This document shows, piece by piece, positions 674 through 60,556 of a stretch of DNA of 64,000 nt (position 1 is its first letter; every line of letters begins with the position of its first letter). Made by a program: the position numbers and the translations under genes. The notes beneath the pieces are model-generated. The model was not told the origin of the DNA, ran no database searches, and worked only from the letters and a program-made list of their open reading frames with translations. Location of the stretch: contig OZ365111.1 of assembly GCA_977030845.1 (NCBI GenBank), positions 45,694,001 through 45,758,000 on the forward strand, written 5' to 3'. This DNA comes from Fimbriosthenelais zetlandica. Lineage: Eukaryota.

Positions 674-718
674 GGGTGGGTGGGTGGGGGGGGGGGGGGG
701 GGGTGGGGGGGGGGGGGG
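674..718 (+). repeat. Poly-G / (GGGT)n tract
   Basis: About 45 nt that is almost purely G. Confidence 0.95.
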
Positions 719-2544: not shown

Positions 2545-2589
2545 CCTCTGCTTCTCTATCTCCTTCCTCTCTCTCCTGTCTCTCTCTCC

Positions 2590-2622
<33 letters not shown>

Positions 2623-2735
2623 TCTCTTCTCTATATCTCTCCCCTGTCCCTCTCTCCCTCTCCCCTGCCCCTCTTCTCTTTCTGCTTTTCTCCTCTCTGT
2701 CTGTCTCTCTCTATCTCGCTCCTCCTCCTCTCCTT
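2545..2735 (+). repeat. CT-rich low-complexity tract
   Basis: Interrupted (CT)n; explains the spurious Leu/Ser and Arg/Glu ORFs at 2454-2787. Confidence 0.95.
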
Positions 2736-3999: not shown

Positions 4000-4148
4000 T
4001 GCTTCTCCCTCTCCCTCTTCTCACTCAATCGTCATTCTCCATTCTCTCTCTTCCTCACCTCTCTCTCTTGCCTCTCTCTCTCTCTCTCTGCATCTCTCTA
4101 TCTCTCTGCATCTCCCCCACTCTCTCTCAGCATCTCCTCCACTCTCTC
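4000..4148 (+). repeat. CT-rich low-complexity tract
   Basis: Interrupted (CT)n. Confidence 0.9.
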
Positions 4149-11700: not shown

Positions 11701-11740
11701 AGAGATCGAGAGAGAGAGAAGTAGAGAGAGAGAGAGAGAG
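11701..11740 (+). repeat. (GA)n microsatellite
   Basis: Interrupted (GA)n. Confidence 0.9.
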
Positions 11741-25995: not shown

Positions 25996-26194
25996 TGCTC
26001 TCCTCACCGTGTCCTCACCTCTCTCTTGTCCTCTCTCTCACCTTCTCTCTGCTTTCTCTCTGTTATCCTTTCCTCTCTCTGCTTTCTCTCTTCTATATCC
26101 TTTCTCTCCTCAATCTCTCACTCTCCTCTTCCCCTTTCTATGCCCACGCTGTCTCTCCCTCTCCATCGCTCTCTATCTCTCTCTCTATCTCTCT
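25996..26194 (+). repeat. CT-rich low-complexity tract
   Basis: Interrupted (CT)n. Confidence 0.92.
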
Positions 26195-32022: not shown

Positions 32023-32157
32023 ATGCAGTCCGGTCACCTGAAGGGCCACCTACATCCTCTAGAAGAAATCGTTGATAGAAAGCCTTCCCTTAGCCAACTT
32101 CAGCAGAACGGGCCAACCTGCCGTGACAGGACTATCTCCCACGATAGGGTCAAAGAG
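32023..32157 (+). CDS. AUTS2: Internal coding exon (135 nt, phase 0-0) of an AUTS2/FBRSL1/tay-family gene; probable equivalent of AUTS2 exon 3
   Basis: Acceptor ...gctgactaat...attattccAG after an AG-free stretch of about 69 nt; strong donor GAG|gtaagt. Only frame 0 is open (MQSGHLKGHLHPLEEIVDRKPSLSQLQQNGPTCRDRTISHDRVKE); the other two frames contain stops. The C-terminus RTISHDRVKE resembles AUTS2 RSSSRERLSD, and QNGPTCRD resembles QNSCRD (reference recalled from memory). The symbol denotes the family, not proven 1:1 orthology. Confidence 0.65.
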
Positions 32158-34529
32158 GTAAGTCCGTGTCATTTCCTAACCTCAGTTACTCTCATTAACA
32201 GGTCTGATTATTTTACAAACATAGCTTGTATCCAAAACAAAGTGGAACGTGCACTTGATTCAACTCACTCATCAGTATTAATTGTTTTCTTAGAACCTGT
32301 TACTTTCATTAGAACCACTTTTGTTCTTATGGTACTCGTGAATAAGTTGGTATATTTCCCAGCAATATAACAAGGTCAATCTCTGAGAATTGATTTAAGA
32401 AATGGAAAGGGAAAAGGCCTATATTTATTGCTCCTGTTGACAAGTATTCATCAGGTGTTAACGATGTCAGGTTATTTCTTTAAGAGTGTGACAGTATTCT
32501 GAATGTTAGGCCTGTTAGTACATAAACGAGTCTTTATTGCCAAAATGATGGCCCTATCATTCCATAAAAGCCCCGAGTCTCTCTGCCATCCACAGACATG
32601 TCATTTTCTTCAAAAGACTGCCTTGCTCTGTGTCCAAGGCATCCTCCCTTGTTGGGCTTCCACTGACACTGCAGCAATAACTCGGTAAAACATTGTGACA
32701 AAGGAGTTTGCAAGTTTGTCACTTTAACACGGTCCTACTGTCAGTGCTACTGACACAGGCCACGGACAACAAGGAAACTCACTTGAAGAGCAGGGACGGA
32801 CTCTTCTTAGGCTGTCAAGCGGATCCATGGATGCTATAGGAAGGTGTAATGGCTGGAGACAAAGCGAATCCTTGCCGAGCACGTGAACTGTCCAGATTGT
32901 CAGATGCAGTTTGGGTTGGTCTCCCTCCATGTGTCAGGTCGCAGACTATGATTATGCTACATAGGTTGGCAGCACTTTTGTGGTTATTGAGGTGCCACAC
33001 ACAAAACACTCCACCTCTTACTCTCCTTATCTCTAACCCAGTCTCTATAGAGCATCTCAATTTTCCTAATGGCTTGGCACCCTGTAACAAAGGAAATCAT
33101 CTGATATTTTAGCTTTTTGGGCTGTTCTTAGTCATAATGGTTACTGTTGAAGAGCATGGATTCTTTGTCCATGCAATTCAGTCTTCGATCAAGTTTTCTG
33201 AATTCATAGCATTTTTCTTTTCATCATTACTGATTGCAGTTTCTGTATTTCCATTTTGTGGTCTGTGTTCCATACAATGTCCTTTCACTGTTCGCAGCTT
33301 GCTGACTTAGTATATCGACAGTTATAACCTCCCTACCTTCACCTCCTTCCGCCAGTCTGAGGCGAGGAAACTGTCCTCCTCTCCTCCATTGATTGAGACT
33401 AGAGCTAATGGTAGTCACAGTAATCACAGGTATTGAAGAAAGCAGGCCCCGACAGACATACAGCGCGCACTTTACCTCTCATTCATCACTGCTTTATTTA
33501 CTTAACCGCCCCTATTGATCAGCAAAAACGGGGGAAGTGTACTTGGGCCGGAAGAGAGAGATCGGGTTCTGGCCAGCACTGCTTTAGCCTGTCTTGTCCG
33601 TCCGGTTGGCTCGCTTTCACTTTGGTGTCGGCAGTGGGATTTTGTGGTGGCGAGGCCTGACCGTGGCAGATTACTGATGACATTTCCTCCTTTATCGATC
33701 ACTGCAGCGCTGTGGGTCTGAGCATCCGAATCGAATGCCATTAGGCACTTGAATGCTTCTTATGCACTGGGAGCCTAGTCTCCACCCAGCCCACGTCCAC
33801 ATCTCCCCATCTCCTCGCGGTCAAAGGTCATGATCTCTCACCTCCTTCTGCCCAGCTCTGATGGCTAAAATGTCTGGGGGAGCTATGTCAGATTTGAGGC
33901 AGAATCATTCGTATTGAAAAATGGTTAGATTGATTAGGTTGGATAAATTGCTTCTCTTGCTCTCCTTTCACATTCGTCTCTCTCACAAATACGAAAGTGA
34001 AATTTCGTCCATGGGGAATATAATCCATTAGGGAATTCTATCAGAGAAAAGTTATGAGTTGCAGTCGATGGTTGTATTTCCAAATGTCAAAGGCGTCTGC
34101 TTTTATTTCAATATCAGTTGATAGTGTGGTGTCTTTCCTTTATTCTTGTAATGGATCGGTCTGATAGCTGATATGTGGGATATTTTTTAACACTTTATGA
34201 GAGATCAGCCACGGGATTGTCATTACTGACGTTTAGAGGATCTCTAAAAGCAGTAAGCAGGGCCTGCTCTAAGTCACAGGTCTCATTAATACAGGCCCAT
34301 TCAGTCTCCTAAACCCCTAGTGGCCACCAACTCCATTCATCGGGATCTTTCTGGATCATTATGGCCTTTTATTGTCCCCAGTCCAGATCCCTGCTTTCTC
34401 TGCAGCACCCTGCCAGTTGGATCCCCCACTTTCAGTATAGCAGATAAAGAAAGATGTTTGCATCGTGAAGTGGCATGACCTCTTTTCACCGGGACCTCGG
34501 GGCCACCTCTGGTTATGGCGAGCTTGGCT

Positions 34530-34539
34530 TGATTTATGG
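34530..34539 (+). promoter_or_regulatory. Hox-Pbx composite site
   Basis: TGATTTATGG inside a GC/CpG-richer block; an identical 10-mer lies at 63821-63830. Confidence 0.35.
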
Positions 34540-34918
34540 CCATGTTAGCGTTGTTGCGGCGTAATGTGGACCGTCAAGGCAGTTATCAGAGGCAGGTCGG
34601 CTGCTTGCCACCCCACCGCTGGGCGAGGGCGTGCAAAAGACCATAGCCATTCAGATCACACTTGGTTTGATTGATCCAACATCCGCCATTTGCGGCAATG
34701 ACAATACGAACCCGGACTAATGAATAGCAGATAGGGACGGTGGGCAGTGCCGCGTAAAATGAGACAGAATCGGGTGATCATTATCGCCCTAGCCGCCTGC
34801 TTCCGGTGGGAGGCAGTCCGCTGGGGGATGGGTGGTGAGAGGGGAGGCTGAAGACGGAGTGACTCAAGCCGATAACACATTTGCTCCCGAACAGTAGGCG
34901 AAAGAGATCACCCATGTT

Positions 34919-35081
34919 CACTGTACCGACACATGCAGCCGTAACTGCAGTTACATACGTACCAAGATGGCGGGAGGCAGGTTTCGCCGATTTGTATTTT
35001 CCTCGATTGTTGCCTAACAAACCTTTTTCTTAAAAATGTGAATCGACAGATCTCTTCGTTTTTGTCTTATCAAGGCATGGG
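34919..35081 (+). repeat. Left terminal inverted repeat (163 bp)
   Basis: Perfect inverted copy at 35982-36144; contains the palindrome GTAACTGCAGTTAC (34941-34954) and CAAGATGGCG (34963-34972). Confidence 0.97.
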
Positions 35082-35140
35082 TTGGTTCTAATCCACTTGT
35101 AAGGTTGTTAATTTCTTGTAATACGGAAAATAAATATCGT

Positions 35141-35889
35141 GAGGTACCACCATAACTGAACTGCCGATACCACCCTAACTGCACTATTAGATTTCAAAGG
35201 TACCACCATAACTGAGGCCAAAAAGGTACCACTGTAACTCATTTATTTCTGATAATGCCTCAATAGAAGTAGAGAGATCAATGGAGATCGAATTATAACG
35301 GCTATTAATCAGGATTACCGGGTACTAAGTTATCTACATTGCACTAAGTATAGCATAGGCTGACAAAGACAATGTATGAGCAGAAACAGGGGTAGAATTT
35401 TCCATTCTGGTGTAGTGTATGCCTACGGCCCTGCAGGGCAGGCAGTAAATATCAACTTTGTTTAAAGACACAAGCAATTATTATAGCCGCTGATATACAA
35501 CGGCCATTAGAATATTTTGGTCGGTACAAACGGCTATTTTTCTAACGATTCTTAAGAAAATTTATGAAAGAATTTGAGAGATGCAATAACTCTCCAGGAA
35601 GGATTAAAATGGTCGGCCCACAAAACTCGCATCGAAGCTTGGCTATGAAAAAGCCAGTTATGGTGGTACTGTTTATATCACGCTGAAAACACACCGCATG
35701 TCCACTGACAGCATTGTAACCAAGTTATCAGATATCACCTCCAGCTCATATTACCATAAACCCTCCAGAAGAACATTATTAACCTATCTGACACATTGAT
35801 ACAGCTTGTTATTGTCTAGAAACGTGTTTATATTGATAGAAAACCGTTACAGTTATGGTGGTACGCAGACAAAGTTAAGGTGGTACCTC
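35141..35889. mobile_element. Nested non-autonomous element (749 bp) with GAG...CTC ends and an apparent 4-bp TSD (Sola2-like)
   Basis: Left end GAGGTACCACCATAACT versus right end read inward GAGGTACCACCTTAACT (16/17), extending as an imperfect IR of about 41 bp. Flanks are TCGT (35137-35140) and TTGT (35890-35893), differing by one CpG-type C>T change. Confidence 0.62.
35143..35887. repeat. Subterminal motif array GTACCACCATAACT: four forward copies on the left, three inverted copies on the right
   Basis: Forward at 35143, 35166 (degenerate), 35199, 35225 (degenerate); reverse at 35655, 35850, 35873. Confidence 0.9.
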
Positions 35890-35981
35890 TTGTTTACACG
35901 AACCCAGTTACACACATACAGCCCATTTCTTTTCATGTAGATTTCACCATTATAGGACCTAAACGTACCCATCTAGTCACC

Positions 35982-36144
35982 CCCATGCCTTGATAAGACA
36001 AAAACGAAGAGATCTGTCGATTCACATTTTTAAGAAAAAGGTTTGTTAGGCAACAATCGAGGAAAATACAAATCGGCGAAACCTGCCTCCCGCCATCTTG
36101 GTACGTATGTAACTGCAGTTACGGCTGCATGTGTCGGTACAGTG
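35982..36144 (-). repeat. Right terminal inverted repeat (163 bp)
   Basis: Exact reverse complement of 34919-35081. Confidence 0.97.
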
Positions 36145-38089
36145 ATGTTCTGCATCAGGTGGTGGTGATCTTTTTACGCTCACTTCAACGCGTTGCCCTC
36201 ATGAATTTTGCATTCTCTTTTTTCCTGCTTTCAGCTCGATTGTTTGCTCAATCTTCACGTCCTCCATATTGCTTTTCCTATCTTCTAGGTCTTAGTCAAT
36301 CATGTTTTTTTTTCATTTTTATTATTTACATAAAGGAAATAGTAATCTCTTTCATACCAATAGACCAGGCATGCCTTCTTTTAGGTTATTAGCAGTGAAT
36401 GGTTAAGCCATCTCCTGTCTTTTAGAGCGACAACTATATCTACCGACCTCCATATTCTTGTCATGGACCTGGTGGGGAACTGATCAAGTGATTTGCTTAC
36501 ACGATTATGACGACCCATACGAGGCAGTAATGAATCGGTGATAAATTTAATAAATACCATTCACAGGAGAACACACAGTCATTGGGGCGCTTGATAAGGC
36601 ATCCGGGGTGGCACGATCATGGCTGGGCATTCGAATGAGGCCCAACAGAGGCTAGAGGGGGATTGGAGGCAGCCTTTACGTTTGTGTACTCGATGTCGAG
36701 TAAACACCACCTTGGACTGGTCGTATGCCTCTCATGGGCATACTTCATTCCACCACACACCGGCTTATGCAGGGTGGGATACTCGGCGAAAGGACAACCT
36801 TGTCGTGCTATGGGACCTCAGCCCTCTCCGATTCCTCATCAAATAGGAAGCCCAATGAATGCAGATTGCCTTGTATTAAGCCAAGCTCCATTTCCATTCT
36901 GATTCATCTCGTGATCCCCCAAGCCACCGGCATTTTATCCCCTTTCTTTGCACAGTTGCTCCCCCTGCCCGCTGGAAGAAATGGGGAGTGCGTAATATAT
37001 ATAGCAATGATATTCAATAGCGTTTCATATATATGAATACTGGTGGCCATGTTAGCACTTAAAGCCTCGGGGCCTGGCAGTATTGGTGGGTGATTTAAGG
37101 CAGTGGAAGGTCAGTACCTTAGGGAGTCATCCGAAATGGCAGCAGCAAGCAATGCTTGGCGTCTGAAGATTGTAAAAACGGTGCCACCAAAGCACTCTGA
37201 GGTGTCTCCGCTGTCAATTCACCATGATGTATGGTGGCTGGAAGCAGTGGGTAAGATAATTGAGGCGAGGCGCAATGTGCCGCACCGACACCCGTCTAGC
37301 GCCTCCGACTTGACACCACCTCCCTCAACACACGCCTCACTCCATATACTACTCACACCAATTATACACTGTACCTACCCATGTTTAGTCAAGGCCTTCA
37401 TAGCTTCAACATGGGAAGCCATTATAATTCTAGCTCTATACACATACTGGCATGAAGTATTATAAACATGCCCTCTAGACAACTGGGTGAACAGTAGACA
37501 TGGTCATTACATTTGGCAGGAAATGAATGTTCCTTTGTATGACCATGAATGGTAAGATAATATTTGAATGATTCATTGGCATTTAGAGGCAATGGGTGAT
37601 TATGATTGCTATTCATTTCGCTATTCATTTCTTTGGAAGGATTTTCTGTTTAAACGAAGTTTACATTTGAAAAATGTCAGTGAGTTAGGTGAGTGAATTT
37701 TGCTGTCTGTTTTTGTTGTTTGTTATAAGCGAAATTAATATACAAGACATTTTAAATGAGCTTTATCTGGCTTCTCCGTTTGAAATTTACAGTTGAAAGC
37801 TTGCATATTTGAAAGACTGAGAAAATTTGAGTTTGTATTTGAGTTAATTTGTTGTGTTGAATTCACTACCTTACTGAATGGTTACATTGAGAATGCCGAG
37901 GTGCTGCAGGTTGCTTCCATGAAGACTCCTAAACTCTGTTTTTCATCTAGCCGTCTTTACATCATGAAATACATTTATAATTGTTACATTCCTTTACACT
38001 TCCACATTCCTCGCGTAAAGTATTGCCTGTGCTTTTACAGAAGACTTTAATGAATAATATTCGTCTAATCGTGTTTCCTTTTGTTTCAG

Positions 38090-38125
38090 GGGATTAATAA
38101 TTCTAGTTCAGGCTCGAGCTACTTG
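38090..38125 (+). CDS. AUTS2: 36-nt microexon (phase 0-0), GINNSSSGSSYL; probable equivalent of AUTS2 exon 4
   Basis: Branch-like ctaat plus tract gtgtttccttttgtttcAG; donor TTG|gtaagt; in frame with both neighbouring exons. Same length (36 nt, 12 aa) and a similar Ser-rich segment ending in Y-hydrophobic as the recalled AUTS2 exon SSAPSSLGTGYF. Confidence 0.75.
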
Positions 38126-38149
38126 GTAAGTAGACAATATTCTGTTTAA

Positions 38150-40150
38150 ATCCATGCCATTGGCGGATTATTTAATCTGCTATCAGAGGAGGTAATCAGG
38201 GGTATTACCAAGCGATGCTTTTGTTTGCCATCTCCCCCCATCTCTCCACACACCCGCATGCATAATGAATCAAACACAAATATTTTTCACTGGAAAACCT
38301 AACCCATTGCTTGGAATTGCACTGTATTTAAAATCGGTCTAATTGCAAAGTATGTTGACTGAAAAGCGCTGGGAGACATAGTTACCCTTCAATACAAACT
38401 ACTCCCATTTGATCTGCGTACAGATTTGTCAGTTGAAAAAGGGGAAAAAGAGACGCTGTTGCTCTTGAAAATTATATTCCATTTTGAAGGAAATTCTTTA
38501 AGCTTTGAAGCAAACAATGGAGAGTTGGGAGAGGCTTTGATATTTGTTTCGGAGGGCATTAGCGATGTCCTTGGAGTGGAGGGAAAGAGATGATTATAAC
38601 GGAAGAGGAACCCGCGGGTGTTTACCTGTACCGGATGACATGACGAAACGCCCCCTGCAGGCATCGACAGACATCAGCTACACCCGCACCTAGCGGACAA
38701 CATTAAAGCCTAATCTGCCCCAGCACAAAACGCCACACATGAAAGCGCCGAAGCAAATTGAATGAATAAAGCAATTTATCTAATTTGCTGCTTATTTCAC
38801 TGTGAAATATAAGACTTTGCCCTATCCCTCAGACACTTCTCATTTGACTTGCCTGCCGTGTTGTGATAAAGCGGTGATTGGTCGAGTAAATGCTGGCGTC
38901 AGATAGATAAAGGAAAGAGATGGGAGATGGGTGTAAGGGAGGGAAGGGCTGAGAAAAATCAATACAATCTTACCACATATATAATGGAGTTTATCATAAG
39001 AAACTGTCGGATGTAATGGGTGTCTTACATAGTGTTTCAAACCAGTGTTATCTGGTCGTTTCACATTTTTCTATTCCTCATATTAAAACGTCTGCCTACT
39101 GAAATAAAACAGACTTTCCCATTGACTTATACCAATTGCTGATGTTGCAAGAAAGTTATGAATGTTTGACCCAGCAGAGTGAAACAAAATAATTGAGCTG
39201 TCAATTTGCCATTTAACAATCCCATATTTCAGAATCTCAGTTACTTCCCCGAAAAACCATATATTACCTATATTAAATCATCCTGAGCTTTGACAGATTC
39301 CAGGTGCGGCAAATTGACGACATGGATATTAATGGCGTTGTCGCTTTTAGGACATAAATAATTCAAATGTTTATTTGCCTCGGCTGAATGAAGAGGCATT
39401 AGTGAAGCCAGTGGTGAAGCCCGTCTAGTTTGGAAGCCACAACAGGCTTTTAGGCGTTTGTCGGGGATGGGGGAGGCGGCTGGTGCACGAGCCAGTTGGC
39501 TGGCGCTGTTCAGTGGCACTGGCCCAGAAATAACATGGCTAGTGCGAGGTGACAGCGATAAATTGGTTGAATCACCCGGGATCGAGGCCGAGGCGTAGGG
39601 GTGACTACACTTGTCACCTCGGATCTGGGAGGAGGGTGGGAGTGCCCCAGCATCCCTCGCTGGGATTAGGGTTAGAGATCGTAGCAGCATTGCAAGCCCC
39701 AGCAGACTGTTAACTGCCAGGCTAGAGTTATGAATAATAACAACCGTTTCTTCATTATCCACCCATGTCCCTCTGTGCTATTAACATGTTTTCCTTCCAT
39801 ATTACTAGCAGATCGCGAATGTTGTCATTGGCAAAAAGTTGGCGTTAGCAATAACAAGTTTGGCATGATGTATTTAAATGGAAATGAGTTGTAGACAGAT
39901 AGTCAAACATCAATATCCGCAGCGACAGGAGGCGTTGATGATTTAGTTGCCATGGTTACAGCAATCTAGCTGTGTTGCCTGGACACTTGCCGTCATGTGT
40001 GGTGGTATATGGAGTCTCCTCACAGGATGATGGATTAGCAGAAATGTAGATGGATAATCGCCATCATGTATCATCTGAATTTCTCACTTGGCGTCAGGTA
40101 ATCTGAGGGTGGGCGAGTGCTATGTATGCGCGCCGTCACTAATGGTTCAT
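38150..40150. promoter_or_regulatory. Enhancer/CNE-like blocks downstream of the 36-nt microexon
   Basis: Homeodomain sites, a forkhead-type TGTTTAT near 39369 and a near X-box GTTGCCATGGTTAC (39946-39959); inference only. Confidence 0.35.
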
Positions 40151-40874
40151 CAAACTTACTGTTGGTGAAAACTGTATATTTACAGTCCATATATGATTCC
40201 CTGTGCTTGATGTCATCAAGGCATCATAATTATTTATTTCAAAACAGATACCAAATTCATCCAAAGAAGCAGTTCATACCTTGATGGTCTGATGTTTCTG
40301 ATATAAATCGTTCACAAAGTACTTAATTTTATTTGCAAAATCAATAGTTATGTGGACAGATTTCATACACTCAGTTCTCAAAATAAAAGTAAATGGGAAG
40401 ATTATTTCTTCTAGTATAATATAAAGTTAGATAGGTGAATATTAGAAGCTTTTTATGTCTGGCTTCCTCTTCTTGGTATACAAATGGTAGCCAGGGGAGA
40501 ATGGTGTAATGAGTTCTGCCACACGTGCTCCAGCTTATCAGCTAGAATGAGTGATCCCAGGAAAGTAAAGAACAGGTAGCCTGATTGAGCTGGCCTCTGG
40601 GTTGACAGACCAACACCTACCTCATCGAGACAAGCACCAGAGCTAAGAGACCATCAACAAGAAGCCAATATGCAATCGACCCTCCTTGCTCGCTTGACAA
40701 GAGGGTTGCTAGCCTCCTGCTCGAGTCGCCCTCTCCAGAACTGTTCATAAACAGAGCAGGCCTTGTCCAACTCGGGTAGACCCACTTCTAGGGACTCTCC
40801 TAAGTTCCTCTCATTTCTAGGAGACCTAGAAGAGGCCCATTGAGCTGCCATAGAGACAGAGCTTCTGGAAGGTG

Positions 40875-40888
40875 GTTGCTATGGCAAC
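40875..40888. promoter_or_regulatory. RFX X-box
   Basis: GTTGCTATGGCAAC, a full-length match to the RFX consensus; flanking G and C extend the near-palindrome. Confidence 0.6.
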
Positions 40889-43800
40889 CGGGACTGATTG
40901 AGATGCAGAGCACACTTCAATGAGCTGCCGGTTTCGTCCGCCTGGGGTCTCCACTGCTGGCACCGATACGTGCATGTGGTCTGGAAAGAGAAGAAAGGAT
41001 TTCCCTGGCTGAATGGGACTTAGGATCCCCCAATATCATCCCCTGGAGATTATCCCTTATCCCTTTGGGGTGCCTGTATCCTCTTCCGGATTATCCGGAC
41101 TCGTCGCCTTGGCTTTGGTTAGTTGTGAACAGCGCTGTTGGCCTTTATCTCTTGTGATTGCCTCTGGATGCAGTGAACTTGATCAGCATTAGGTTCCCGA
41201 GTGTGATCTGACCACTCCAGTGGACTCTATACATGATAAAGACCAATACAATGGTCAATATCACTTACCCTACATTGGGAAAGACATGACTGAATCTTAT
41301 CCACGCATGAATTGACAATCGCTTGTACGCTCATGAATGCATCTCTTCTCTATTCATATTTTGAATATTTCATGTCTCACCTACATCTGAAAGGTTTGTA
41401 TCGTTCTGATAACGATTGTTTGCCTTGTGTTTGTTCTGATAAAGTTACCAACGGGATCAATGCGATTGTATTGTAGAGATGCACTCTTAGTGAACTGTAA
41501 CCACTCCAGTACATTCTATCAAGGTTGTGGTCAGGGGCAATTGTTTCCAATCATGACAGCACATTACCCGGCCATTCAGTGTAATCTTGCTATGATAGAT
41601 GATCTTTCCCTCAGATCTGCACTTTTCTTTCCGAGCATTTGACATCATTTGATCAATAATTTCTCCCTCTGCCTGATTATCTCTGGGATGGGGATGATGT
41701 ATGAATTCTGCCATCCACAACCGTGATGTTTATCACAATTGTCCCCACCAACCCTCTCTCTCTAATGGGGTCATGCAGTGCTTCCCCCTTCACAGGGACC
41801 AATGCTATAGTTTCTCTTCATAATAGGCCTAAATCAATGCACTTCCGATTGTTGCTTTGCTCTTGGTTAGATCTAAGGGAAGGTAAATTGATGTGAATTG
41901 GTAGAGTGTGTAATAGTGCCATTACCAAATGGTGTCGCTTCAATTTGGATGAGAGAGATATATGGAGTCCATAGATGTTCCTGTTTTTTGATATGCTGAA
42001 TTTAAAATATTCCTCGAACCATTTTCGAAAGAATAACTCTTGATGTGTGGCAGGTGTTCCTTATTTTGGTCTGGGGGAGTAATCATTTAATTGGTATGAA
42101 CGTGTAAATCAATCTTTAAAAATACATGTATAGCATTTTCAGATAACATTGTTCTGAATAAGTAATGAATAACATGCCAATGGCGTCAGTGACAGGCAAT
42201 GCAAATGGAAGCAGTTAGAAAACCTGGTGAATGGAGAGGACGCGTTGGGCAAGGTACTCCATTTGTGAACATAAAATCGGGGAATATTATGAGAAAAAGT
42301 GCTCTCCTATGAAGCTCATAAATCGTAGCTTATTTCAGGACTGTATTGGTTCTCAACGCTTTGTGCGCAGGCTCTGAATGGCCCTTCATGGGACAGACCA
42401 GTAAAATGTGGCGAGAAGCGCGTTGATTTAACGTTCGCTGAAACGGCAGAAGATGTGAAAAACTGTAACGATTATTTATCGTTATGATTAGACTTGTGCC
42501 AGCTAGGATTGCCAATCGCCCGCCTGTCTGCAGCCTCTTGGCTCTGATAACTCCAAATGTGTGTCGTTGAAGAAGGCGATAAGATGGGGAGAAAAAGGTC
42601 CACTCTTGAGCACTGATAGGGGGGCGATGGCATAAAAATAGGAACAGTGTCTCCATGTCAGCTTAAACAATGTGATTACCACCGTGATTTGGCAAAAAAC
42701 TGGGCGCCAAGAGTAGGAGCTAATGGAAATGGAGAGAAGGCAACATGGCGACGAGAGGCATCTTCTGTACGTCAAGTACACGGACCACGTGACTGGTTAG
42801 AGCCTCGTTGTGACTTGATGGGCGCACCATCTAGTAGCTCTCGAGGACAACAGCCTTACAAGGCAAACCTCCTCTAAGGCTGGGAGGCCTGCCACTTATT
42901 AGTGTAGTCGTTTACTAGGGGGTTGTTGAAGGGACTAGGAGTAGCGGGCAACTACTAGAAAAGTGTGGGTAGGCAGCCGACAACACTATCCACCGTCAAA
43001 TGCCCATCAGTATACGTTGCCTGAGGGGAAATAGACGGCCCCTCGAAGGGAAGCCTCGCAAACAATTGGAGCCCAGGAGTGTGCCTCTCTGACTTCATGT
43101 CCCTCCTTGCCAGCATTTGTATTGAGCGTGGCCCTCAATGGCCCCACAAGGCATAGGAGCCTGCTTCTGCCTTTTTCCCATCGACAAGGATTTGAAGGGA
43201 TGACTGTAGGCACTGGGTCAGCTATTTAGTTTGCTACAATGGGGACAGCCAGACAACTCTCCCGTCACCAGTGGCTTCTTTTTTTCAATGTGGCTTCCAA
43301 TGATTATACGCTGGATGGGAGGTGGCTTCTTTCTGCTGAATGCCCCATGGGTAATCGAAAGTCCCACTGGAACTACATCCGTAACCAAGGGCTTTATAAA
43401 TGCAAAATATGTAGGGCGATCAAGTCGGATTCCATTTACTACTTATGAAGCAAAAAGAGTTGTTTTTTGGGCTTCAAAATGTGCTAGAATCATCGAGGCA
43501 CATTAGAATGGTCTTGCTATCTCCAGATCGCAAGCTTTAATTTGAATCATAGCAGCAGACATTGTCTAAACATGTTGCCCAGTAACCGTCATAGATTTCA
43601 AACTGAAACTAATTTCATCCTCTACTGGGTATTTTGTGATTCTAGCTAGATTTTCCCCCAGCCATCCTCAATTTCATGAGCTTATTAAATTGAAATGGGA
43701 TTGAATGACAAAATCAACAAATACACTGGAGCTTTCATCACCGAATGCCTCTAAATCGTTTGCAATCTCAGTTTGTTCCTAAAGTTGTAGGTGGTAAACT

Positions 43801-44639
43801 GATAATAGTTAATTTTCACACTCCAAGGACAGATCTAAAATTCACACTCCGGTAATTTAACTAATTTGAGAAAGCGTCGAGACAGCCTTTCTATTATTCC
43901 GGGGCAGTCCATACAATAACATTTCAATCGATTCGTATTACGAGCGCTGTATTATATCTCCGCCAAATGCTGAAATACAAACCAAATTGAAAGGCAGCAT
44001 TTGGCGAACAAAGGTCCCTTCCTGTATTGGACTTGCGAGGTGTTGGTTCCTGAAGTACTTTCTTTATACTTTCCTCTGTATGGGACATCTCCAAATTACC
44101 CAATATGCTGTGTCACTGTGGTATGGCTTTATTGTCAAATTTGCAAGCACTGTCTCGCTCGTCTATAGGAAGCCCCTGTGTCTGAATGACTCTTGTTTTA
44201 AAAGCCTTTCTATCAAACGCCCTTTTAATGACGGCTGTGGCTCTGAAGGCTGCAAGGCAAATTGAAAGGTGCTGTGAGATTCTTTTTATATCTTCTTTAT
44301 TCAGAAAGCATTCTCTTTCTGTTGTCGATGAAGTATCCTTTCTCACATTCAGCTCATATATGAGCGAATTAGAGTAAGAAGAAAAAAATACTTGCACACA
44401 TGCCTTGCTTATATTCTACTCATGAAGTAATGACAGAATCTCATGAATGAATGATGTGGGGGATCCAGTAATTTGTAATGGTGCCATCATCTCGTAGAGA
44501 CTTTACAAAGTCTATAAGCATCGTCACAAGTTAGTGGTATTTAATGAGACATCGCATTGTATGCTGAGCATCCAACGCCTCGCATTATATACATCGTTGT
44601 GGAAATAAATAAGCTTCGCTCCGTCTCCCTCCCTCTCAC

Positions 44640-46350
44640 TCACTCACTCACTGCCAAGCGCGAATATCACTCATTGCCAAGCCTATTGACTACGCCAAGG
44701 TAAAAGGCAATACTATTGGGATTTAATGGAATGCATATGGCAGACTAAAACACGCTATCGCACTAAATTCCCAATGTCCTTTGTATTTCCACCGCCATTT
44801 TTATCAAGAAGAAAGCAATTTGTGAAAGCGCAAAAACGGCGAGAAATAAAGAGGAATCCTTTGCCGCGGGTTTTTAGGCCGCCTGGAATGAATGGCTGGC
44901 TGTCATTACAGCGGCGCTGTGAAGAAAACCAAGTGAATCTTTCAGCCGCTGTGAAGCCATATGCATCGATTTATTTTTTCCCTGCCAGCTTATCAATTAG
45001 GCCATATATACAGTAATGAAGCGAGGGATTGAGGCAGCGTGATTTGTCATTGGGAGCTAAATTATTGTGCCATCATGCATCTTAGCGAGTAATGAATCCA
45101 GATTGGAGTTTATTTCTTAATGTGTGGTGGCGACGGAGACGGATCACCGTTTAAATTGATATTCATTCCCCAAGTGTTATTTTTGATTAATTATTTATTC
45201 CAAGCGGTGTGCGTGCGGTGCTCGGAGGTTTTTAATACCTGGCAATTAGGCCCGGTCTGAACCGGCAGTGTTTTATTAACAAACCTCGGCGGTAAAAATC
45301 AGCCATAATGAATGGATTAGTTTGATGGCAAGCTAAAAAGCATTTCATGGAAAAGGCTACAGGAAAGGCATTGTGGCGGCGGCGGCGGGCGCGTGTTTGG
45401 AGCGTTAACACCGCTCACTGATTTATTTAAGGTGCACTGTTTTAGGTGCTCTGCTTGTCTAAATGGAATAATAGTGAGTCCCCAGCTCTGATGCTACACA
45501 AATTATGAATAAACAAGGCAGCAATATGTTATTAGGTAAATAGCTCCAATCAGACCAGCCCACAGAGAGAAAGTGTTGGATGGGGAGAGGTGGGTGGGTG
45601 GGGGGTGGGGGGGTGTGTTCCCATCGTTGCCGGAGGCCGTTAAAAGAAACGCCTGTTTTTGTTTCATCAACTGTTTCATCAACAGGAGCGATAAAAATGC
45701 GATGGGAGCCGCGAGGATGTAGCAACAAATAGGCTTTCAATAAAGAACTAATGAGTTGGAAATGCATCTGCGGCAAGCGCCTGAAAAAACCGCTAACAAA
45801 TAGATGCGGTTTTGATTAGGTCTAAACGATGCTGAAATCACTCGCCTTAGTTTCCATTTTATCAGAATTAAACGCTAAAGAGATTAGAATGTAGCTTCAG
45901 CAGGCGGCAGTGGAGAACAAAAGTGGCGGAATAAATGCGCCGAGGTTATTGAAAGCAAATTAGATAACATCAAAATAGATGGCACACATTGAAAAGTCGC
46001 AGAGAAAAGTTAACTAACAGATAGATTTTCACTGGGCGTTCACGTGTTTGTCGCATTAGGGATAGCGACAGAGTTTTCATCTCTTCGTGACTAAGCTTAA
46101 TTTTGACAGATGGCCTATTGACACCATAAGCTGGCGTTCTGTATTGTCACGAACGCCGATGATGCCAACTGACAAATTGCTTGATTACGTCAATGGATTT
46201 AATTTGATACCTTAACGCCATTGGTGAGCTGGTCAATTCTAATCACGATTCCTTGTAAGTGAACTTAAAACACAGCCCCGCCCGCCCAGACATGGATTAA
46301 TTGAAAGCACCGAAGGGGATCATTACCCTCAAAAATAACCCCAGTTGTGA
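44640..46350. promoter_or_regulatory. Long enhancer/CNE-like block
   Basis: About 1.7 kb with a very high density of TAAT/ATTA/CAATTA motifs interleaved with GCGGC/CpG runs; no coding signal; inference only. Confidence 0.4.
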
Positions 46351-48722
46351 GGAAGTCAATTTCCAACCAACCTTGAGAAGGATTCTGCATTATGGATCTT
46401 CTCCTAAAAAACATTTACCAGGTCACTCACTGCAATGGAATATGCTGATATGGATTAGCAATGTGTCAGTGCAGTAAATTCAGTTTATTCATGCCACAGG
46501 GACCTGTGGGCTTCGAAAGTAAATGTACCATGGGCTGATGATTTACATCCTTTTAAAAGGAAAGTCCCATGACCTTGAATGTTGACATTGATTTCTGCAT
46601 TATGTTGTGTACATAAGTACGATGTATAAATGGCTGTTAGTACAAGAATAGATCAATACTCCATCGATCCACACTTCCAGACTTATTATGCCAACTGTAT
46701 GAAGCGACCCAGTTTGGCTCTCTATAATTAATTACCCCCAATTGTACCCAGTCATGTTCCAATGAAATCAAGGAGAATTTCATGATTGGCTGATGCATCG
46801 ACCATGCGGGATCATGCTTGGCAAAATGGACTTTCCCTGTGGAGGGCGATCGAGAAAGGAAGAAAATGTCAGTTCCTGAGAAAAAAAACATTGACTGCAC
46901 CTGTACGCTGCCGTGGCCGTGCAAATAACGACAAAAATTATTCCCAATAAAAAAAGATGGAAGCTTTTTCCACGATGGAGTTGTCTGATTTTCAACTCGT
47001 GGCTGAGGGAGGCAGTTGGGAGGACCTTGTGCAAATTGATATTAAGCGTCCTCCACAGTGCGAGCATTGGTGCAAACAGCAAGCCCATGAAATATGTAAT
47101 ACAGATCATTTGTGGCGTGTATAATGGGTGTCTTTGTGTTGGAGGGATCAATGCTCACTGGGAGCGACTCATCCATAAAGGGTAATAACTCGGTGCGGAC
47201 GAGCCGCTCACTGACACAATATTTGGCCTGAATCGCAATATTTGTCTATTAGGCGGCTTATTGGACTATTCAGGGAGCCATCGATTGGTGTACAGTCGGT
47301 GGTGACCGGACCTTGAAATGGATCCATGTTAGAGAAGTGGGTGGTGGTGGTGGTGGGTGGGGGGTGGTGGAGGTGGTGGTCGAGCATCTCGTGTGTAGGG
47401 ATATATTACACTGCGGGTGGGGTGTCGGGCTTAATGTCTGGCCTTTGGTACTATTGCTCTCGTCTCTCTTATAATGCACATGCCCATGAAAAGCGATCTT
47501 GTACATTCTCCTTCTATATTCTCTGTGATTGCACCAAATTGTGAGGGATGTAAGCTATAGGCCTGCACCTGGCATACAACATTGGCCCAAAAGGCAATGA
47601 TCTCCAAATCCATGGCACACAACGACATTTGTGGTGGGCTCTGAGGAACAAAAACATTGGAAATGGGCGGTTTTAGTTAAAATGGAATTTTGAAGGACAT
47701 CAAATGAACTGATGTTGGAATCCCATTTTAATAACCGCCTTCAATTTGACCTTTTATCTCCACAGTCAAAGGCAAATGATTAATGCTTAAAGGCCCCCGT
47801 TTGGTTTGATCTAAAAAACCTAATATCAAAGGTTGTGGTATTGATTCTTATTATAATGGCCATTAGTGATGAATCAGACCATCAAAGTGCTGGAGGCCAA
47901 CCTAAATACCAGTTTCATCTCCCTTTCTCACCCGAACTTAATCGAAACCAACCAGATACAAACACTCAAACACTTTGCCTAGAAGCTTTTAAATTGGATC
48001 CCCTCCCCCCACCCCACGTTTGTTAACCAATAAAAATCCCACCGAAAAAAGCTCCAACGGGTGTTCAATGGCATGATTATGGATTATGTTACAGCAGATG
48101 GGAGTGGTTTCTTTTTTTCAAAAAAAGACTTAAGGTGATGGTCACAGCTCGCCATCCCCCCCTCCACCGCCACCCCCTCTGGTCTCACACACACACCACC
48201 CCAGCTTCAATGTCCGTTTTTTCACAAAGACCATTGTGGTCGTCCCATGCACGCGCCCACCGAGTGTAAACTTTCCAGATTAAAACCAGAAACTGTCGGT
48301 GTGCCGATCATATTTCTCTGGTCGCATCCAATATGCTGGGCCTTGTATTAACCCCGCATGCAGTATGCGGGTAAATATTTGCTCTGGGAAGGAAGCATGG
48401 AATAGAGATGAGGTCATACATCTAGTACAATAGAGAGGTGCCACGTCTAAGTGGGTACTACATGGTAAGGACACCCAGTCCACTGAATCATTAGGTCATA
48501 TACACTCTACATATTAAACCCAAAGATAAAGAGCATTATATCAATGGAGCTAAGCTTACCAGTCATATACATCAAATAATACTCTCCGAAAAAAGTATCT
48601 AGAGAAAAGTGAACATAAATAGTCTTTCAAGATAATTTACCTTGTATAAAATCTAAGATTAAGGTCGCGAGTAGTTAAAGGGAAAAACAGGCAATTGCAT
48701 GTGTTATTGGGGACTCTCACAG

Positions 48723-48872
48723 AAAAGAGACCTTGGAGAAACTGAACCTCGCATCCCTCCTCAGAGAGTATCCCTAGACATCAAGATGCAAATCCAAACC
48801 TATTATTGGAAATCGAATCCCTGTCTAACGATTTCGACAAGACATCAGAAGACGGGCATCGTTTTCTCGAAC
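48723..48872 (+). CDS. Candidate 150-nt phase 0-0 cassette exon between the two microexons
   Basis: Acceptor ctctcacAG (weak tract), donor AAC|gtgagt. Only the phase-compatible frame is open (KRDLGETEPRIPPQRVSLDIKMQIQTYYWKSNPCLTISTRHQKTGIVFSN); no recognisable homology. Confidence 0.25.
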
Positions 48873-50891
48873 GTGAGTGCTAGTTCTCATTTTGAGTTTT
48901 GTTCCCGTTTAATATGCTCGTATTTCTCTGCAAGCTTTCCTTCAGTTTCATTCTCAATTTCCAATATCAGCTCTTGTGTGTCCAGGTCAGGCTTTATTGG
49001 TCGAGTCCTGACAGATAGGGACGCCATCAGGCCTTCAGAAGACAGATAGGGCCTAATAGCGGCAGGGTTACTCACTTTTGAAGCCCGACTTCCATTGGTG
49101 AACACTGTGTGCTTACCGTTTGGAAGAAGTGCATGGGGGCAATTAGTATATTAACTAGAGAGGAGATGGGAGGAAGCCATTCACAGGTATAAGGGAATGG
49201 AGGTCTATAAGCCAGGCGACCTCTTCATGCTGACAGCAAGACCTTGGTCTTAAACGATGGATGGCTTACCAAGCATGGATTCATCGCCCGGCTCAGGCAC
49301 TAGCAGGCAAAGTGCCAAGTGTAGCGGGTGTTTTCTTTCCACTTGTTGGCGGGCGCATCCTGCCTGCACGACCTGACAGGTAACAGACAATGAAAGATGA
49401 GGTCGGCAGAAGCAAGAGAGAAATACAGCCTAATGATATCAAAATGAGATGGTGTCAACACAGCCTGGCACAGAGAGGCAGGTGCCTTTTGATATGGGCC
49501 CTGATCAGAGAACTCTTTGAGGGGCATAAATAAGATAGAGCCAGATCAAAAAGCGAGTAATTTCATCTGATATTACTGATGCTCTCAGCTTTAGGTACAA
49601 ATAAGGAGCTTAGGAGGTTTTTCTGCCTCTGCTGAACAGATATTGCTTGGCATTGATCTATATAGAGCCGGCTATACACCAAGTAGTTTAGGAATCGGTT
49701 TACACAGAAAAGGGAAAGTAAATTAAAAGCTTCTGTTTGATCCTTTGATCCCAAGATCATTCATCGTGCAACTGATCACAAGCAAGATGGCTCTGTCGTA
49801 CATTGGATTAAAGGATAAATATAGATATATTCTCTATTCAAAGCCCGAGGCAGCAAGACCTACATATTATATGCGTGGATTCAGCCTACATATTTATGCA
49901 CATTCAGTGTGGGCACAATCCTTTCATCCACCCATTCATTCATAAATTTTAGCATCAGATTCTTATCATAGAAATTCACAAGTTCAAATTACTGGTTTCC
50001 TTCGAAAGTGAATATCTTTGATGAAGCTTTTGAAGGGAAGTCATATTGGAAACTACTTCAGTTCCTGAGCATTATACCTTCATTCAATATTTGTAACATT
50101 TAAATCTAACTAAAGGCCCACATAATATCACCAATCCCTCAATAATGATTTGCTTGATTACATAATTTCTTTTTGTGCAGGACTGAGAACCGAACATTAT
50201 TCCCTTTCCAACAATGTAAAAATTCAATCCCAGTTATGTCTGGATATCAATGGGACATCATTGCATGATTAGAACAATGTCTGGAGTGTGGAAGGCTTGA
50301 CGATAAAGCCACGAGACTGAATTTCCATCCCATAGTGAAGTCAAACCAGATTTATCGAGTTAAAAACCATATTTGATGGGCCGTCATGCCAAATGACATG
50401 TAATGAGTAAAGTTTTTAAATCGAGTAGCACACAATTGTCAAAGGGAGGTATAGTGATTGGAGAAGGTTTTTTTCCCAAGAGCGATTGATGTAATGTTTT
50501 CCCGCAAATGTCAGTCGTAAACCTTCAGAAGCAATGCTAATAGCCCGGGCTTTATGATAATTATTGCGCAAAGCTGCCAACATTTGAAACTAGAAATGTC
50601 TTTGAGAACATGTAATTGACATTTTATTTGGTGATTATTTGGTTGGCAGCCAAGATAATGAAAGTTGTGTTGTCGTATCCGGGGTGTGTAGGACCCGTTC
50701 ACTCATTCATTTTAAAGGAAACCTTAAGTGTTTTTGTTCTTGATGAAATCTTAATGTTTGAATCGCAATTGAAAAGTAACTTTGTCATCTACGTTCCATT
50801 TATAAATGCCATCGTCTACGCCGTATGCATCTGCCATTTTTATTTCCATTTTCTGCTTATCATTAATGATGTTTTATCTTTTCTCTTGCAG

Positions 50892-50924
50892 TGTGATAGT
50901 GTTAGTAGTGGGCTTGACAATAGG
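50892..50924 (+). CDS. AUTS2: 33-nt microexon (phase 0-0), CDSVSSGLDNR; probable equivalent of AUTS2 exon 5
   Basis: Strong acceptor ttttatcttttctcttgcAG preceded by a 113-nt AG-free zone (50777-50889); donor AGG|gtaagt. Splicing to the 36-nt exon rebuilds Y-L-C-D-S, matching the recalled family motif GY[FI]CD[SA] (AUTS2 GYF|CDSDSDQEEK; paralog GYICDAESDLDER). Confidence 0.8.
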
Positions 50925-59454: not shown

Positions 59455-59519
<65 letters not shown>

Positions 59520-59533
59520 CCTCTCTCTCTCTC
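59450..59533 (+). repeat. (CT)n microsatellite
   Basis: Near-pure (CT)n of about 80 nt. Confidence 0.97.
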
Positions 59534-60556
59534 TGAGCAATCCCTCCCAACATCTTGCCATAAGAAGTACTGATGTATACTAAGATCATATAATAGGAAT
59601 ACAACAAGTATGACAAGTATGAATATGTGTAAGAAAAATAATACCCTGTGGATTGGTATAGCACAGTGGAAAAACAAGAGCCAATGAAAAATGTGAGTTT
59701 ATTGCCTGCATACATCACATCGTCGCCCCACATGAACAGACTAGTAATTTCTCAAACAGCATTTAACCCTGAGAATGAAGAAGTCTGTCTGCTGTTGACT
59801 CCCCTCCAGAAGCCATGATGGAGAAGCCATGTCTGTAGTGTGGTGTTGTTGTCACCCTCCCTCCCACCACTCTACAACTACCCCCTCCAGGCAGGATCTC
59901 CAGGGCGTTACCATGGCATGTTGGGGGGTGTGAGACCACTCCCAGGGGGTGTGAATTACTGATGGGGTGATTGGTAGTGTTGTAAGCTCCCCAGGGGGAA
60001 AGAAGGCAACTCTAGACAGCTCCCCTGAACAGGACAAAGGCGCCTCCATTGCTTGTTAAAAAGTCACTAATGGGAACGCTGCTGGCTTAGTTTACCAGCC
60101 CTACACTCCCCTCATGAATCTCTATTTAAACTGTTTGCATTAAATCAGGGCTTAGTGGGCAATACTTAAAGGCTTAGAGTCTGTATTGCTGCACCCATTT
60201 TTTAGATCATTTAAATATAAAGGACTCTAGTGCAGTATTATTTCCCACTTTAACTCCGCATTGGTCCATCGATAAGTTGATCGACTGAATGTACTATATT
60301 GCTCTGATTTTAAAAGATATAACTTCGATATTTAATATTGTGATGTTAGGTTTTAGAAGCTGTGCCCAGGTATTTATTCAAAGAATAATTTTAATATTGG
60401 ACTAATTGGCATTCAAGTATTGTCTACTCGGTCAACTGTGAACTTAACTAACGCTAATTGTGCTCAAATTGAGTATTAGTACTTTCTCAGAACTGCCGTT
60501 TACTTTGATTGAACACCCCTAGCTGTCCTTTTCTGAAAGAATATGTCAGAGGTATG

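What the first reader, a model, noticed from the sequence alone, without database searches (positions are those of the whole stretch)
34914..36149. Very young CAC-ended, 5-bp-TSD transposon: possible non-autonomous member of the Transib/RAG-like lineage
Seen: perfect 163/163 TIRs, CACTGTA ends and an ATGTT duplication. Only a 5-bp TSD fits the CAC boundary; an alternative parse with a 3-bp TGT TSD and T/A-extended ends explains fewer matches. Established: CAC ends with 5-bp TSDs define Transib and the RAG-like (ProtoRAG) transposons, whereas CACTA/EnSpm and Chapaev give 2-4 bp. The terminal heptamer matches 5/7 to both the RSS CACAGTG and ProtoRAG CACTATG. Inference: zero TIR divergence suggests a recent insertion and possibly an intact transposase elsewhere in this genome. 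The TIRs are symmetric and lack an ACAAAAACC nonamer at 12/23 spacing, so this is not an RSS pair.
Basis: partly seen in the sequence, partly recalled or inferred. Interest (0 to 1): 0.8.

Follow-up and report, generated by a model that had tools for sequence, protein, structure and literature searches.

The report
Young CAC-ended non-autonomous DNA transposon
This is a real, recently inserted 1.2-kb jumping gene with no gene of its own; its ends and 5-base target duplication fit the Transib family (the relatives of the antibody-gene recombinase RAG1), but that could not be proven because no other copy or parent element could be reached.

Summary
Window 34919-36144 is a 1,226-bp element with perfect 163-bp terminal inverted repeats (164 bp counting one extra T/A pair). 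It has CACTGTA...TACAGTG ends and an exact ATGTT direct repeat on both sides. It has no ORF and no protein-domain remnant.

New here: a bipartite motif, GTAC-N5-TAACT, occurs 8 times in the 64-kb window, and all 8 are inside the element. Six lie in two interior arrays in opposite orientation. One lies in each TIR, starting 23 nt behind the terminal heptamer. The arrays are therefore most likely the element's own subterminal binding sites, not foreign cargo.

The Transib reading is plausible (about 0.55) but rests on two features of a single copy. The TIR has no A-rich nonamer. It lacks the A-rich block at positions 8-10 of RAG-like transposons, so the ProtoRAG/RAGL part is not supported. The duplicated target is AT-rich. 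Papers show that hAT5 elements also make 5-bp duplications, and that duplication length varies inside the Transib lineage.

No other copy or autonomous partner could be reached. Six other unchecked first-reader notes in this genome report similar CAC/5-bp elements. Overall: an ordinary young MITE-like transposon with a mildly unusual end architecture.

The parts
34914..34918 (.). Left copy of the 5-bp target site duplication, ATGTT
   Evidence: Read directly; identical to 36145-36149.
34919..35081 (+). Left terminal inverted repeat, 163 bp, starting with CACTGTA
   Evidence: the repeat finder I1, 100% complementary to the right arm. CpG observed/expected is 1.13, against 0.53 for the rest of the window.
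34941..34954 (.). 14-nt palindrome GTAACTGCAGTTAC inside the TIR (two inverted TAACTG half-sites); mirrored at 36109-36122
   Evidence: blastn self-hits and the TAACTG map.
34948..34963 (-). TIR copy of the 16-nt motif (GGTACGTATGTAACTG on the minus strand), at TIR positions 30-45, directly behind a 22/23-nt spacer after the heptamer
   Evidence: Pattern GTAC-N5-TAACT and the motif alignment.
35143..35240 (+). Left subterminal array: 4 copies of GGTACCACCATAACTG (2 exact, 2 variants). The fourth copy contains CACTGTA, identical to the terminal heptamer
35241..35654 (.). Central non-coding filler
   Evidence: No ORF over 50 aa. No Pfam or PDB similarity in any stop-free piece.
35655..35887 (-). 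Right subterminal array: 3 copies of the same motif in the opposite orientation
35982..36144 (-). Right terminal inverted repeat, 163 bp, ending in TACAGTG. It carries the mirrored motif copy at 36100-36115
36145..36149 (.). Right copy of the target site duplication, ATGTT
   Evidence: Read directly.

Best explanation
Window 34919-36144 is a recently inserted, non-autonomous cut-and-paste DNA transposon. It sits in non-coding DNA, probably an intron.

Shown:
- perfect 163-bp TIRs with CAC...GTG ends;
- an exact 5-bp duplication of the target, ATGTT;
- no coding capacity;
- one bipartite motif (invariant TAC-N5-TAACT) shared by both TIRs and by two opposed interior arrays.

Inferred:
- It is moved in trans by a DDE transposase encoded elsewhere in this genome.
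- That enzyme binds the repeated motif and cuts exactly at the CAC ends. It joins the ends to target DNA with a 5-bp stagger.
- The combination of CAC ends and a 5-bp stagger places it in the CAC-ended CMCT clade (CACTA/EnSpm, Mirage, Chapaev, Transib). Within that clade Transib is the most likely branch, and for Transib cleavage by a nick-hairpin reaction is documented.
- It is not a RAG-like (RAG1L/RAG2L) transposon end and not an RSS pair.
For: - Anatomy.
- No coding capacity: no ORF over 56 aa inside. All interior stop-free pieces gave nothing in Pfam at E up to 10. The two longest gave nothing meaningful in PDB.
- Motif: GTAC-N5-TAACT has 8 hits in the window, all inside the element, against 0.43 expected and none of 100 shuffles reaching 8. 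The hexamer TAACTG occurs 10 times against 0.53 expected. An alignment of 9 copies shows invariant TAC and TAACT.
- Youth: 0/163 arm differences, giving a 95% upper bound of 1.8% divergence. All 9 CpGs per arm are intact. TIR CpG observed/expected is 1.13 in a host background of 0.53. The TSD is exact.
- Family: Transib is characterised by 5-bp TSDs and invariant CAC (PMC1131882). Hztransib TSDs are invariably 5 bp and its TIRs show little nonamer likeness (PMC4840297). CMCT lineages share CA..TG ends and 2-5 bp TSDs (PMC12730594). Non-autonomous Transib derivatives of about 1.4 kb amplify well in Drosophila (preprint 10.64898/2026.08.26.747230).
Against: - Only one copy was seen, so the TSD length rests on one event, and a 3-bp parse exists.
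- There is no A-rich nonamer at either the 12- or the 23-bp spacing. TIR positions 30-39 read CAGTTACATA.
- The TSD is AT-rich (1 G/C in 5), whereas Transib, ProtoRAG and RAG prefer GC-rich targets (PMC1131882, PMC8289069). The 35-bp insertion site is 51% GC.
- Described Transib TIRs are about 37-38 bp (PMC1131882; preprint 10.64898/2026.08.26.747230). I know of none with subterminal repeat arrays; such arrays are, from my own knowledge, typical of CACTA and hAT elements.
- hAT5 also gives 5-bp TSDs.
- No transposase partner was found or could be sought.
Confidence: 0.55

Rival explanations
1. It belongs to a CAC-ended lineage that is not Transib by transposase phylogeny. This could be a CACTA/Chapaev-like or an undescribed CMCT branch whose enzyme happens to make a 5-bp stagger. 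The subterminal arrays would work as CACTA-style binding sites for the transposase.
For: - The CACTG end and the opposed subterminal repeat arrays are the classic CACTA layout, from my own knowledge.
- TSD length is labile in this clade (PMC12730594; preprint 10.64898/2026.08.26.747230).
- The TIR lacks the Transib nonamer and the GC-rich target.
Against: Described CMC elements give 2-4 bp TSDs, and none of those lengths fits at the CAC boundary here. No such 5-bp CMC lineage turned up in the papers I read.
Confidence: 0.15
2. It is a non-autonomous hAT5-type element. hAT5 is the hAT subgroup that makes 5-bp target duplications, and hAT transposases commonly bind short subterminal repeats.
For: - hAT5 is characterised by 5-bp TSDs and occurs in invertebrates and fish (PMC9004415, PMC12730594).
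- Subterminal repeat arrays are present here.
Against: - In the 22 hAT families compared in PMC1131882, the third terminal base is always G. Here it is C. Whether this rule holds for hAT5 I could not check.
- A 163-bp TIR is long for a hAT element.
Confidence: 0.1
3. The true ends are T...A (34918 and 36145) and the duplication is the 3-bp TGT. The extra matching bases A and T would then be chance. The element would belong to some family that makes 3-bp TSDs.
For: - The inverted repeat does extend one base further, to 164 nt, with TGT on both sides.
- Some Transib-lineage elements make 3-bp TSDs (preprint 10.64898/2026.08.26.747230).
Against: - This parse needs two independent chance matches (about 1/16). 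The 5-bp parse needs only one (about 1/4).
- TCAC... ends and a TGT target fit neither CACTA (ends exactly at CAC) nor PIF/Harbinger (TWA targets, from my own knowledge).
Confidence: 0.1
4. It is a composite. A short foldback MITE of about 470 bp (the two TIRs plus about 150 bp) would carry a second, unrelated transposon at 35137-35893. This is the nested Sola2-like reading of note s1-198418.
For: - The interior block is bounded by a 17-nt inverted repeat, GAGGTACCACCATAACT (94%, I3).
- It has an imperfect 4-bp flank match, TCGT/TTGT.
Against: - The same TAC-N5-TAACT motif, with the same spacing, sits in the outer TIRs, and it occurs nowhere else in 64 kb.
- One array copy contains the outer terminal heptamer CACTGTA.
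- The flank match is imperfect. The apparent GTAC/GTAC flank repeat is only the palindromic part of the motif.
Confidence: 0.08
5. It is not a mobile element. It would be an assembly artefact or a local inverted duplication.
For: Perfect long inverted repeats can arise from chimeric long reads. No reads could be laid on the region.
Against: - The flanks carry an exact 5-bp direct repeat, and the ends are CAC/GTG.
- There is a 900-bp asymmetric interior with motif arrays.
- In-silico excision gives a continuous flank.
Confidence: 0.02

Closest known systems
Transib superfamily non-autonomous elements (for example Transib-N families; Kodama/hopper of Drosophila)
   Same: - CAC...GTG termini and a 5-bp TSD.
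- No ORF.
- A size near the roughly 1.4-kb class of well-mobilised derivatives (preprint 10.64898/2026.08.26.747230).
- A second sequence block that begins about 23 nt behind the heptamer, where the Transib nonamer sits (PMC1131882).
   Different: - The TIR is 163 bp rather than about 37-38 bp.
- The block behind the spacer is AGTTACATA..., not A-rich.
- The same motif is repeated in interior arrays.
- The TSD is AT-rich rather than GC-rich.
- The interior shows no trace of a transposase gene, so it is not a simple deletion derivative.
RAG-like (RAGL / ProtoRAG) transposon ends
   Same: CAC ends, a 5-bp TSD, and T at position 4 as in CACTATG and CACTWM... (PMC8289069, PMC7204232).
   Different: - There is no A-rich TR2 at positions 8-10; this element has CCGACACAT.
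- Only 8 of 17 positions fit the protostome consensus, 4 of them the initial CACT.
- The arms are perfectly symmetric.
- RAGL targets are GC-biased.
CACTA / EnSpm-Mirage-Chapaev (CMC) elements
   Same: A CACTG end, and opposed arrays of a short subterminal repeat several hundred bp inside the ends (the resemblance is from my own knowledge of En/Spm).
   Different: CMC elements make 2-4 bp TSDs, and none of those lengths fits here. Their TIRs are usually short.
hAT5 group of hAT transposons
   Same: A 5-bp TSD (PMC9004415, PMC12730594); subterminal short repeats are common in hAT elements.
   Different: The third terminal base is C, not the G seen in classical hAT ends (PMC1131882). The TIR is very long.

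Membership tests
Transib superfamily | 5-bp target site duplication | tested here: met
   ATGTT at 34914-34918 and 36145-36149. This is one copy only, and a 3-bp alternative parse exists.
Transib superfamily | Invariant 5'-CAC...GTG-3' termini | tested here: met
   CAC at 34919-34921 and GTG at 36142-36144.
Transib superfamily | CACAATG-like heptamer beyond CAC | tested here: inconclusive
   CACTGTA matches CACAATG at 4 of 7 positions, only 1 of the 4 positions after CAC. This is no better than chance. The consensus is from PMC1131882.
Transib superfamily | A-rich nonamer (AAAAAAATC-like, AA at nonamer positions 5-6) after a 23-bp (or 12-bp) spacer | tested here: not met
   TIR positions 30-39 read CAGTTACATA, and positions 19-28 read AGCCGTAACT. 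The feature is not universal: Hztransib TIRs show little or no nonamer likeness (PMC4840297).
Transib superfamily | [quoted passage not shown] | tested here: not met
   The TSD ATGTT has 1 G/C in 5. The 35-bp site is 51% GC and the 15-bp site 53%. This is a statistical tendency, so a single insertion cannot decide it.
Transib superfamily | An autonomous partner with the same ends that encodes a Transib/RAG1-core-like DDE transposase | not testable with these tools
   - No other copy in the window.
- No sequencing runs were listed.
- No metagenome or viral match.
- No translated copy in the protein collections.
Transib superfamily | Repbase rule for non-autonomous elements: same TSD length, and terminal positions 1-11 aligning to a classified element with at most 1 mismatch (PMC4455052) | not testable with these tools
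   No Repbase or Dfam library is available here. The end sequences occur in no held paper.
RAG-like (RAGL / ProtoRAG) transposons | Conserved A-rich TR2 block right after the heptamer (AAA at positions 8-10; consensus CACTWMCAAACKTYKBB) | tested here: not met
   Positions 8-10 are CCG. Only 8 of 17 consensus positions fit (compared by eye with PMC7204232; TIR printed).
RAG-like (RAGL / ProtoRAG) transposons | A convergent RAG1L-RAG2L gene pair between the same TIRs in autonomous copies | not testable with these tools
   No access to the rest of the genome.
V(D)J recombination signal sequence pair | Heptamer plus ACAAAAACC nonamer, with 12/23 spacer asymmetry | tested here: not met
The arms are perfectly symmetric and there is no nonamer.
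CACTA/EnSpm-Mirage-Chapaev (CMC) | 2-4 bp TSD at CAC-bounded ends | tested here: not met
   At the CAC boundary the flanks are TT/AT, GTT/ATG and TGTT/ATGT. None matches.
CACTA/EnSpm-Mirage-Chapaev (CMC) | CACTA/CACTG termini with subterminal repeat arrays | tested here: met
   CACTG end; 4 and 3 motif copies in opposed arrays. The defining status of the arrays is from my own knowledge.
hAT5 | 5-bp TSD | tested here: met
   the definition is from PMC9004415 and PMC12730594.
hAT5 | hAT-type termini (G at position 3) | tested here: not met
   Position 3 is C. The rule is from 22 classical hAT families (PMC1131882), and its validity for hAT5 was not checked.
Ginger1/Ginger2 | TGTNR termini and 4-bp (rarely 5-bp) TSDs | tested here: not met
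   The ends are CACTG, and no TGT...ACA boundary is consistent with the inverted repeat (PMC2836005).

The most novel reading that the evidence does not exclude
The element could report a live Transib-type transposase whose end recognition is bipartite in the RSS geometry. The parts would be a CAC heptamer, a 22/23-nt spacer, and then a second specific site (AGTTA-N5-GTAC) that is not A-rich and is also repeated in subterminal arrays. That would be a natural example of heptamer-spacer-second-site recognition evolving with a different 'nonamer'. It would be useful for asking how the nonamer-binding mode of RAG1 arose. Alternatively, its partner could be a CAC-ended, 5-bp-TSD lineage outside Transib.
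Probability: 0.12. Interest if true: 0.6.

Novelty: new member of a known kind. Interest (0 to 1): 0.3.

Why it matters
If an intact partner exists, this genome holds a currently or very recently active CAC-ended transposase. An active enzyme of the Transib/RAG1 kinship outside insects would be a useful comparison for the origin of V(D)J recombination, and possibly a new tool enzyme. The shared TIR and array motif gives a concrete binding-site hypothesis that is testable by gel shift.

As it stands, this is one young non-autonomous DNA transposon in non-coding DNA of an animal genome that earlier notes describe as rich in DNA transposons. That is ordinary.

Tried and rejected
- Other copies in the window: a sensitive blastn of the element against all 64 kb found only itself. 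A scan for CAC...GTG inverted pairs with flank repeats found only this element, plus an internal motif artefact.
- Public reads: the look-up of sequencing runs on the locus (dna) and on the element (any) listed no run, so read laying could not be used.
- Collections: the 24-nt TIR end and a double-motif pattern found nothing in metagenome contigs. The 20-nt end found nothing in viral contigs.
- Protein route to other copies: the exact look-up of 10 interior ORFs found none in the collection. HMMER with the TIR-encoded 41-aa ORF against 1.84 billion representatives gave only 3 weak, repetitive hits at 35-42% identity.
- Such short ORFs are unlikely to be called as genes, and short-read contigs would not carry flanks.
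- Transposase remnant inside the element: Pfam on 10 stop-free pieces and PDB on the two longest gave nothing meaningful.
- Literature string search for the end and motif sequences: none found.
- Host identity and the claimed AUTS2-family gene: Pfam on 16 flanking or long ORFs gave nothing. The host remains unidentified.
- Rfam over the whole window: no match.
- Rejected families: Ginger (needs TGTNR ends), hAT with 8-bp TSD, Mutator with 9-bp, P with 7-8 bp, and piggyBac/Kolobok with TTAA. None fits the flanks.
- I remember the maize En/Spm TnpA motif as starting with CCGACAC, which also follows the heptamer here. I could not verify that from any held paper, so I give it no weight.
Full report
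**1. What is there**

- The inverted-repeat arms 34918-35081 and 35982-36145 are 164 nt long and 100% complementary, with 900 nt between them.
- CAC begins at 34919 and GTG ends at 36144, so the CAC-bounded TIR is 163/163.
- ATGTT lies immediately outside both ends, at 34914-34918 and 36145-36149.
- The 30-nt end occurs only at these two places in the window, against 0 expected.
- This is the only non-microsatellite inverted repeat of 30 nt or more in 64 kb.
- It is also the only CAC...GTG inverted pair with a 5-bp flank repeat.

The feature is real and far beyond chance.

**2. Which boundary**

Two parses exist. One is CAC ends with a 5-bp ATGTT duplication. The other is T...A ends with a 3-bp TGT duplication.
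- If the 3-bp parse were true, the full 5/5 match would need two further chance identities (about 1/16).
- If the 5-bp parse is true, the one-base extension of the inverted repeat needs one chance complementarity (about 1/4).

That favours 5 bp by about 4:1. TCAC... ends with a TGT target also fit no family I know. At the CAC boundary no duplication of 2, 3, 4, 6, 7, 8 or 9 bp fits. I accept the 5-bp parse with moderate confidence. A single insertion cannot make it certain.

**3. Coding capacity and insertion site**

- No ORF inside exceeds 56 aa.
- Ten interior stop-free pieces gave no Pfam family at E up to 10. The two longest gave nothing meaningful against PDB sequences.
- The element is therefore non-autonomous, and its interior is not a recognisable deletion derivative of a transposase gene.
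- In-silico excision leaves no long or domain-bearing ORF across the site, so the insertion is in non-coding DNA.
- Another first-reader note (s1-198390, unchecked) places the site inside an AUTS2/tay-family gene span. I could not confirm any exon.

**4. New anatomy: one motif in the TIRs and in the arrays**

The interior carries 4 copies of GGTACCACCATAACTG on the plus strand (35143-35240) and 3 on the minus strand (35655-35887).

Searching the bipartite core GTAC-N5-TAACT gives 8 exact hits in the window. All 8 are inside the element, against 0.43 expected, and none of 100 shuffles reached 8. Six hits are in the arrays. The other two are one in each TIR, at 34949-34962 on the minus strand and 36101-36114 on the plus strand.

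Aligning the nine 16-nt copies shows invariant TAC and TAACT separated by 5 variable bases. TAACTG occurs 10 times against 0.53 expected, and in the TIR it forms the palindrome GTAACTGCAGTTAC. The fourth left array copy contains CACTGTA, the same as the terminal heptamer.

From this I infer that the arrays and the TIRs are read by the same protein. The arrays would then be the element's own subterminal binding sites. This argues against the reading in note s1-198418 that 35137-35893 is an unrelated nested Sola2-like element. That reading's 4-bp flank match is imperfect (TCGT/TTGT), and the apparent GTAC flank repeat is only the palindromic part of the motif.

The TIR copy of the motif occupies TIR positions 30-45. 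Its invariant AGTTA therefore starts at position 31, right after a 23-nt spacer behind the heptamer. That is where the Transib nonamer sits (PMC1131882). This is a post-hoc observation with a chance of perhaps 1 in 20. I record it as a lead, not as evidence.

**5. Age**

- There are zero differences in 163 paired positions, which gives a 95% upper bound of 1.8% divergence between the arms.
- All 9 CpGs per arm are intact.
- CpG observed/expected is 1.13 in the TIR and 0.65 in the interior, against 0.53 in the rest of the window.
- The TSD is exact.

All of this points to a recent arrival in a CpG-depleting genome. One caveat: the arms of a TIR diverge along the whole lineage of a copy, not only after its last insertion. 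A perfect 163-bp TIR therefore also says that the long TIR itself is young or constrained.

**6. What it most likely is**

It is a cut-and-paste DNA transposon mobilised in trans. CAC...GTG ends with a 5-bp stagger are the classification hallmarks of Transib (PMC1131882). [quoted passage not shown] The missing nonamer is therefore not disqualifying. Kojima's CMCT clade (EnSpm, Mirage, Chapaev, Transib and others) shares CA..TG ends and 2-5 bp TSDs (PMC12730594).

Several points count against a firm Transib call.
- The TSD is AT-rich, while Transib, ProtoRAG and RAG favour GC-rich targets (PMC1131882, PMC8289069).
- The TIR is four times longer than described Transib TIRs.
- Subterminal arrays are, to my knowledge, a CACTA/hAT trait.
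The C at position 3 does speak against hAT, where G is invariant in 22 families (PMC1131882).
- A 2026 preprint (10.64898/2026.08.26.747230) shows 5-bp, 3-bp and TA duplications, and different first TIR bases, within one Transib lineage. It concludes that these traits support but must not override transposase-based classification.

The RAG-like/ProtoRAG part fails a tested feature. The conserved A-rich TR2 at positions 8-10 of the consensus CACTWMCAAACKTYKBB (PMC7204232; also PMC10629977) is CCG here. The 5/7 heptamer matches are at chance level once CAC is fixed.

**7. What could not be done**

None of the following produced another copy.
- Sequencing-run look-ups.
- Metagenome and viral scans.
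- Exact protein look-ups.
- An exhaustive HMMER search with a TIR-encoded ORF.
- A literature string search.

Six other first-reader notes in this genome describe CAC/5-bp-TSD elements. None has been followed up, so they are leads only.

**8. Verdict**

- Observation: confirmed.
- Interpretation: partly supported.
- Reading: a young, non-autonomous, CAC-ended transposon with a 5-bp TSD, most likely Transib-type (about 0.55). It is not RAGL-type and not an RSS pair. Its superfamily remains open until a partner transposase is found.
- Interest: modest. Transib MITEs are known, although they are the rarest MITE superfamily in insects (PMC5199201).
- The only unusual points are the long perfect TIR and the motif shared between the TIR and the subterminal arrays.

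Noticed in passing
window 34926-34932 (mirrored at 36131-36137): The 7 bases right after the terminal heptamer are CCGACAC. I remember these as the start of the maize En/Spm TnpA 12-bp binding motif. I could not verify the motif from any held paper, and a 7-mer match may be chance.
   Followed up: partly
window 34919-35081 compared with the whole window: CpG observed/expected is 1.13 in the TIR and 0.65 in the element interior, but 0.53 in the rest of the window. The host DNA is CpG-depleted, presumably because it is methylated, and the TIR has not yet decayed.
   Followed up: partly
window 2546-2732, 4043-4152, 26019-26194, 59458-59534: There are four long, imperfect CT/TC microsatellite blocks, all pyrimidine-rich on the plus strand, and a GA block at 11700-11742. 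They also produce the spurious long inverted repeats seen.
   Followed up: no
window 674-718: A 45-nt G-rich run, nearly pure poly-G.
   Followed up: no
window 32023-50924: Another first-reader note reads this span as an AUTS2/tay-family gene with microexons. Sixteen ORFs or stop-free pieces across the window (31999-55909), 14 of them in this span, gave no Pfam family. The claim remains unverified. If it is true, the transposon sits in an intron, and a transcript would carry a 163-bp perfect hairpin.
   Followed up: partly
window 34914-35033 and 36030-36155: The ATG of the left TSD copy (ATGTT) opens a 39-aa reading frame that runs into the TIR. The right arm has a matching 41-aa ORF that starts in the flank. 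Neither has relatives in the 1.84-billion-protein library beyond weak repetitive hits. They are almost certainly not genes.
   Followed up: yes
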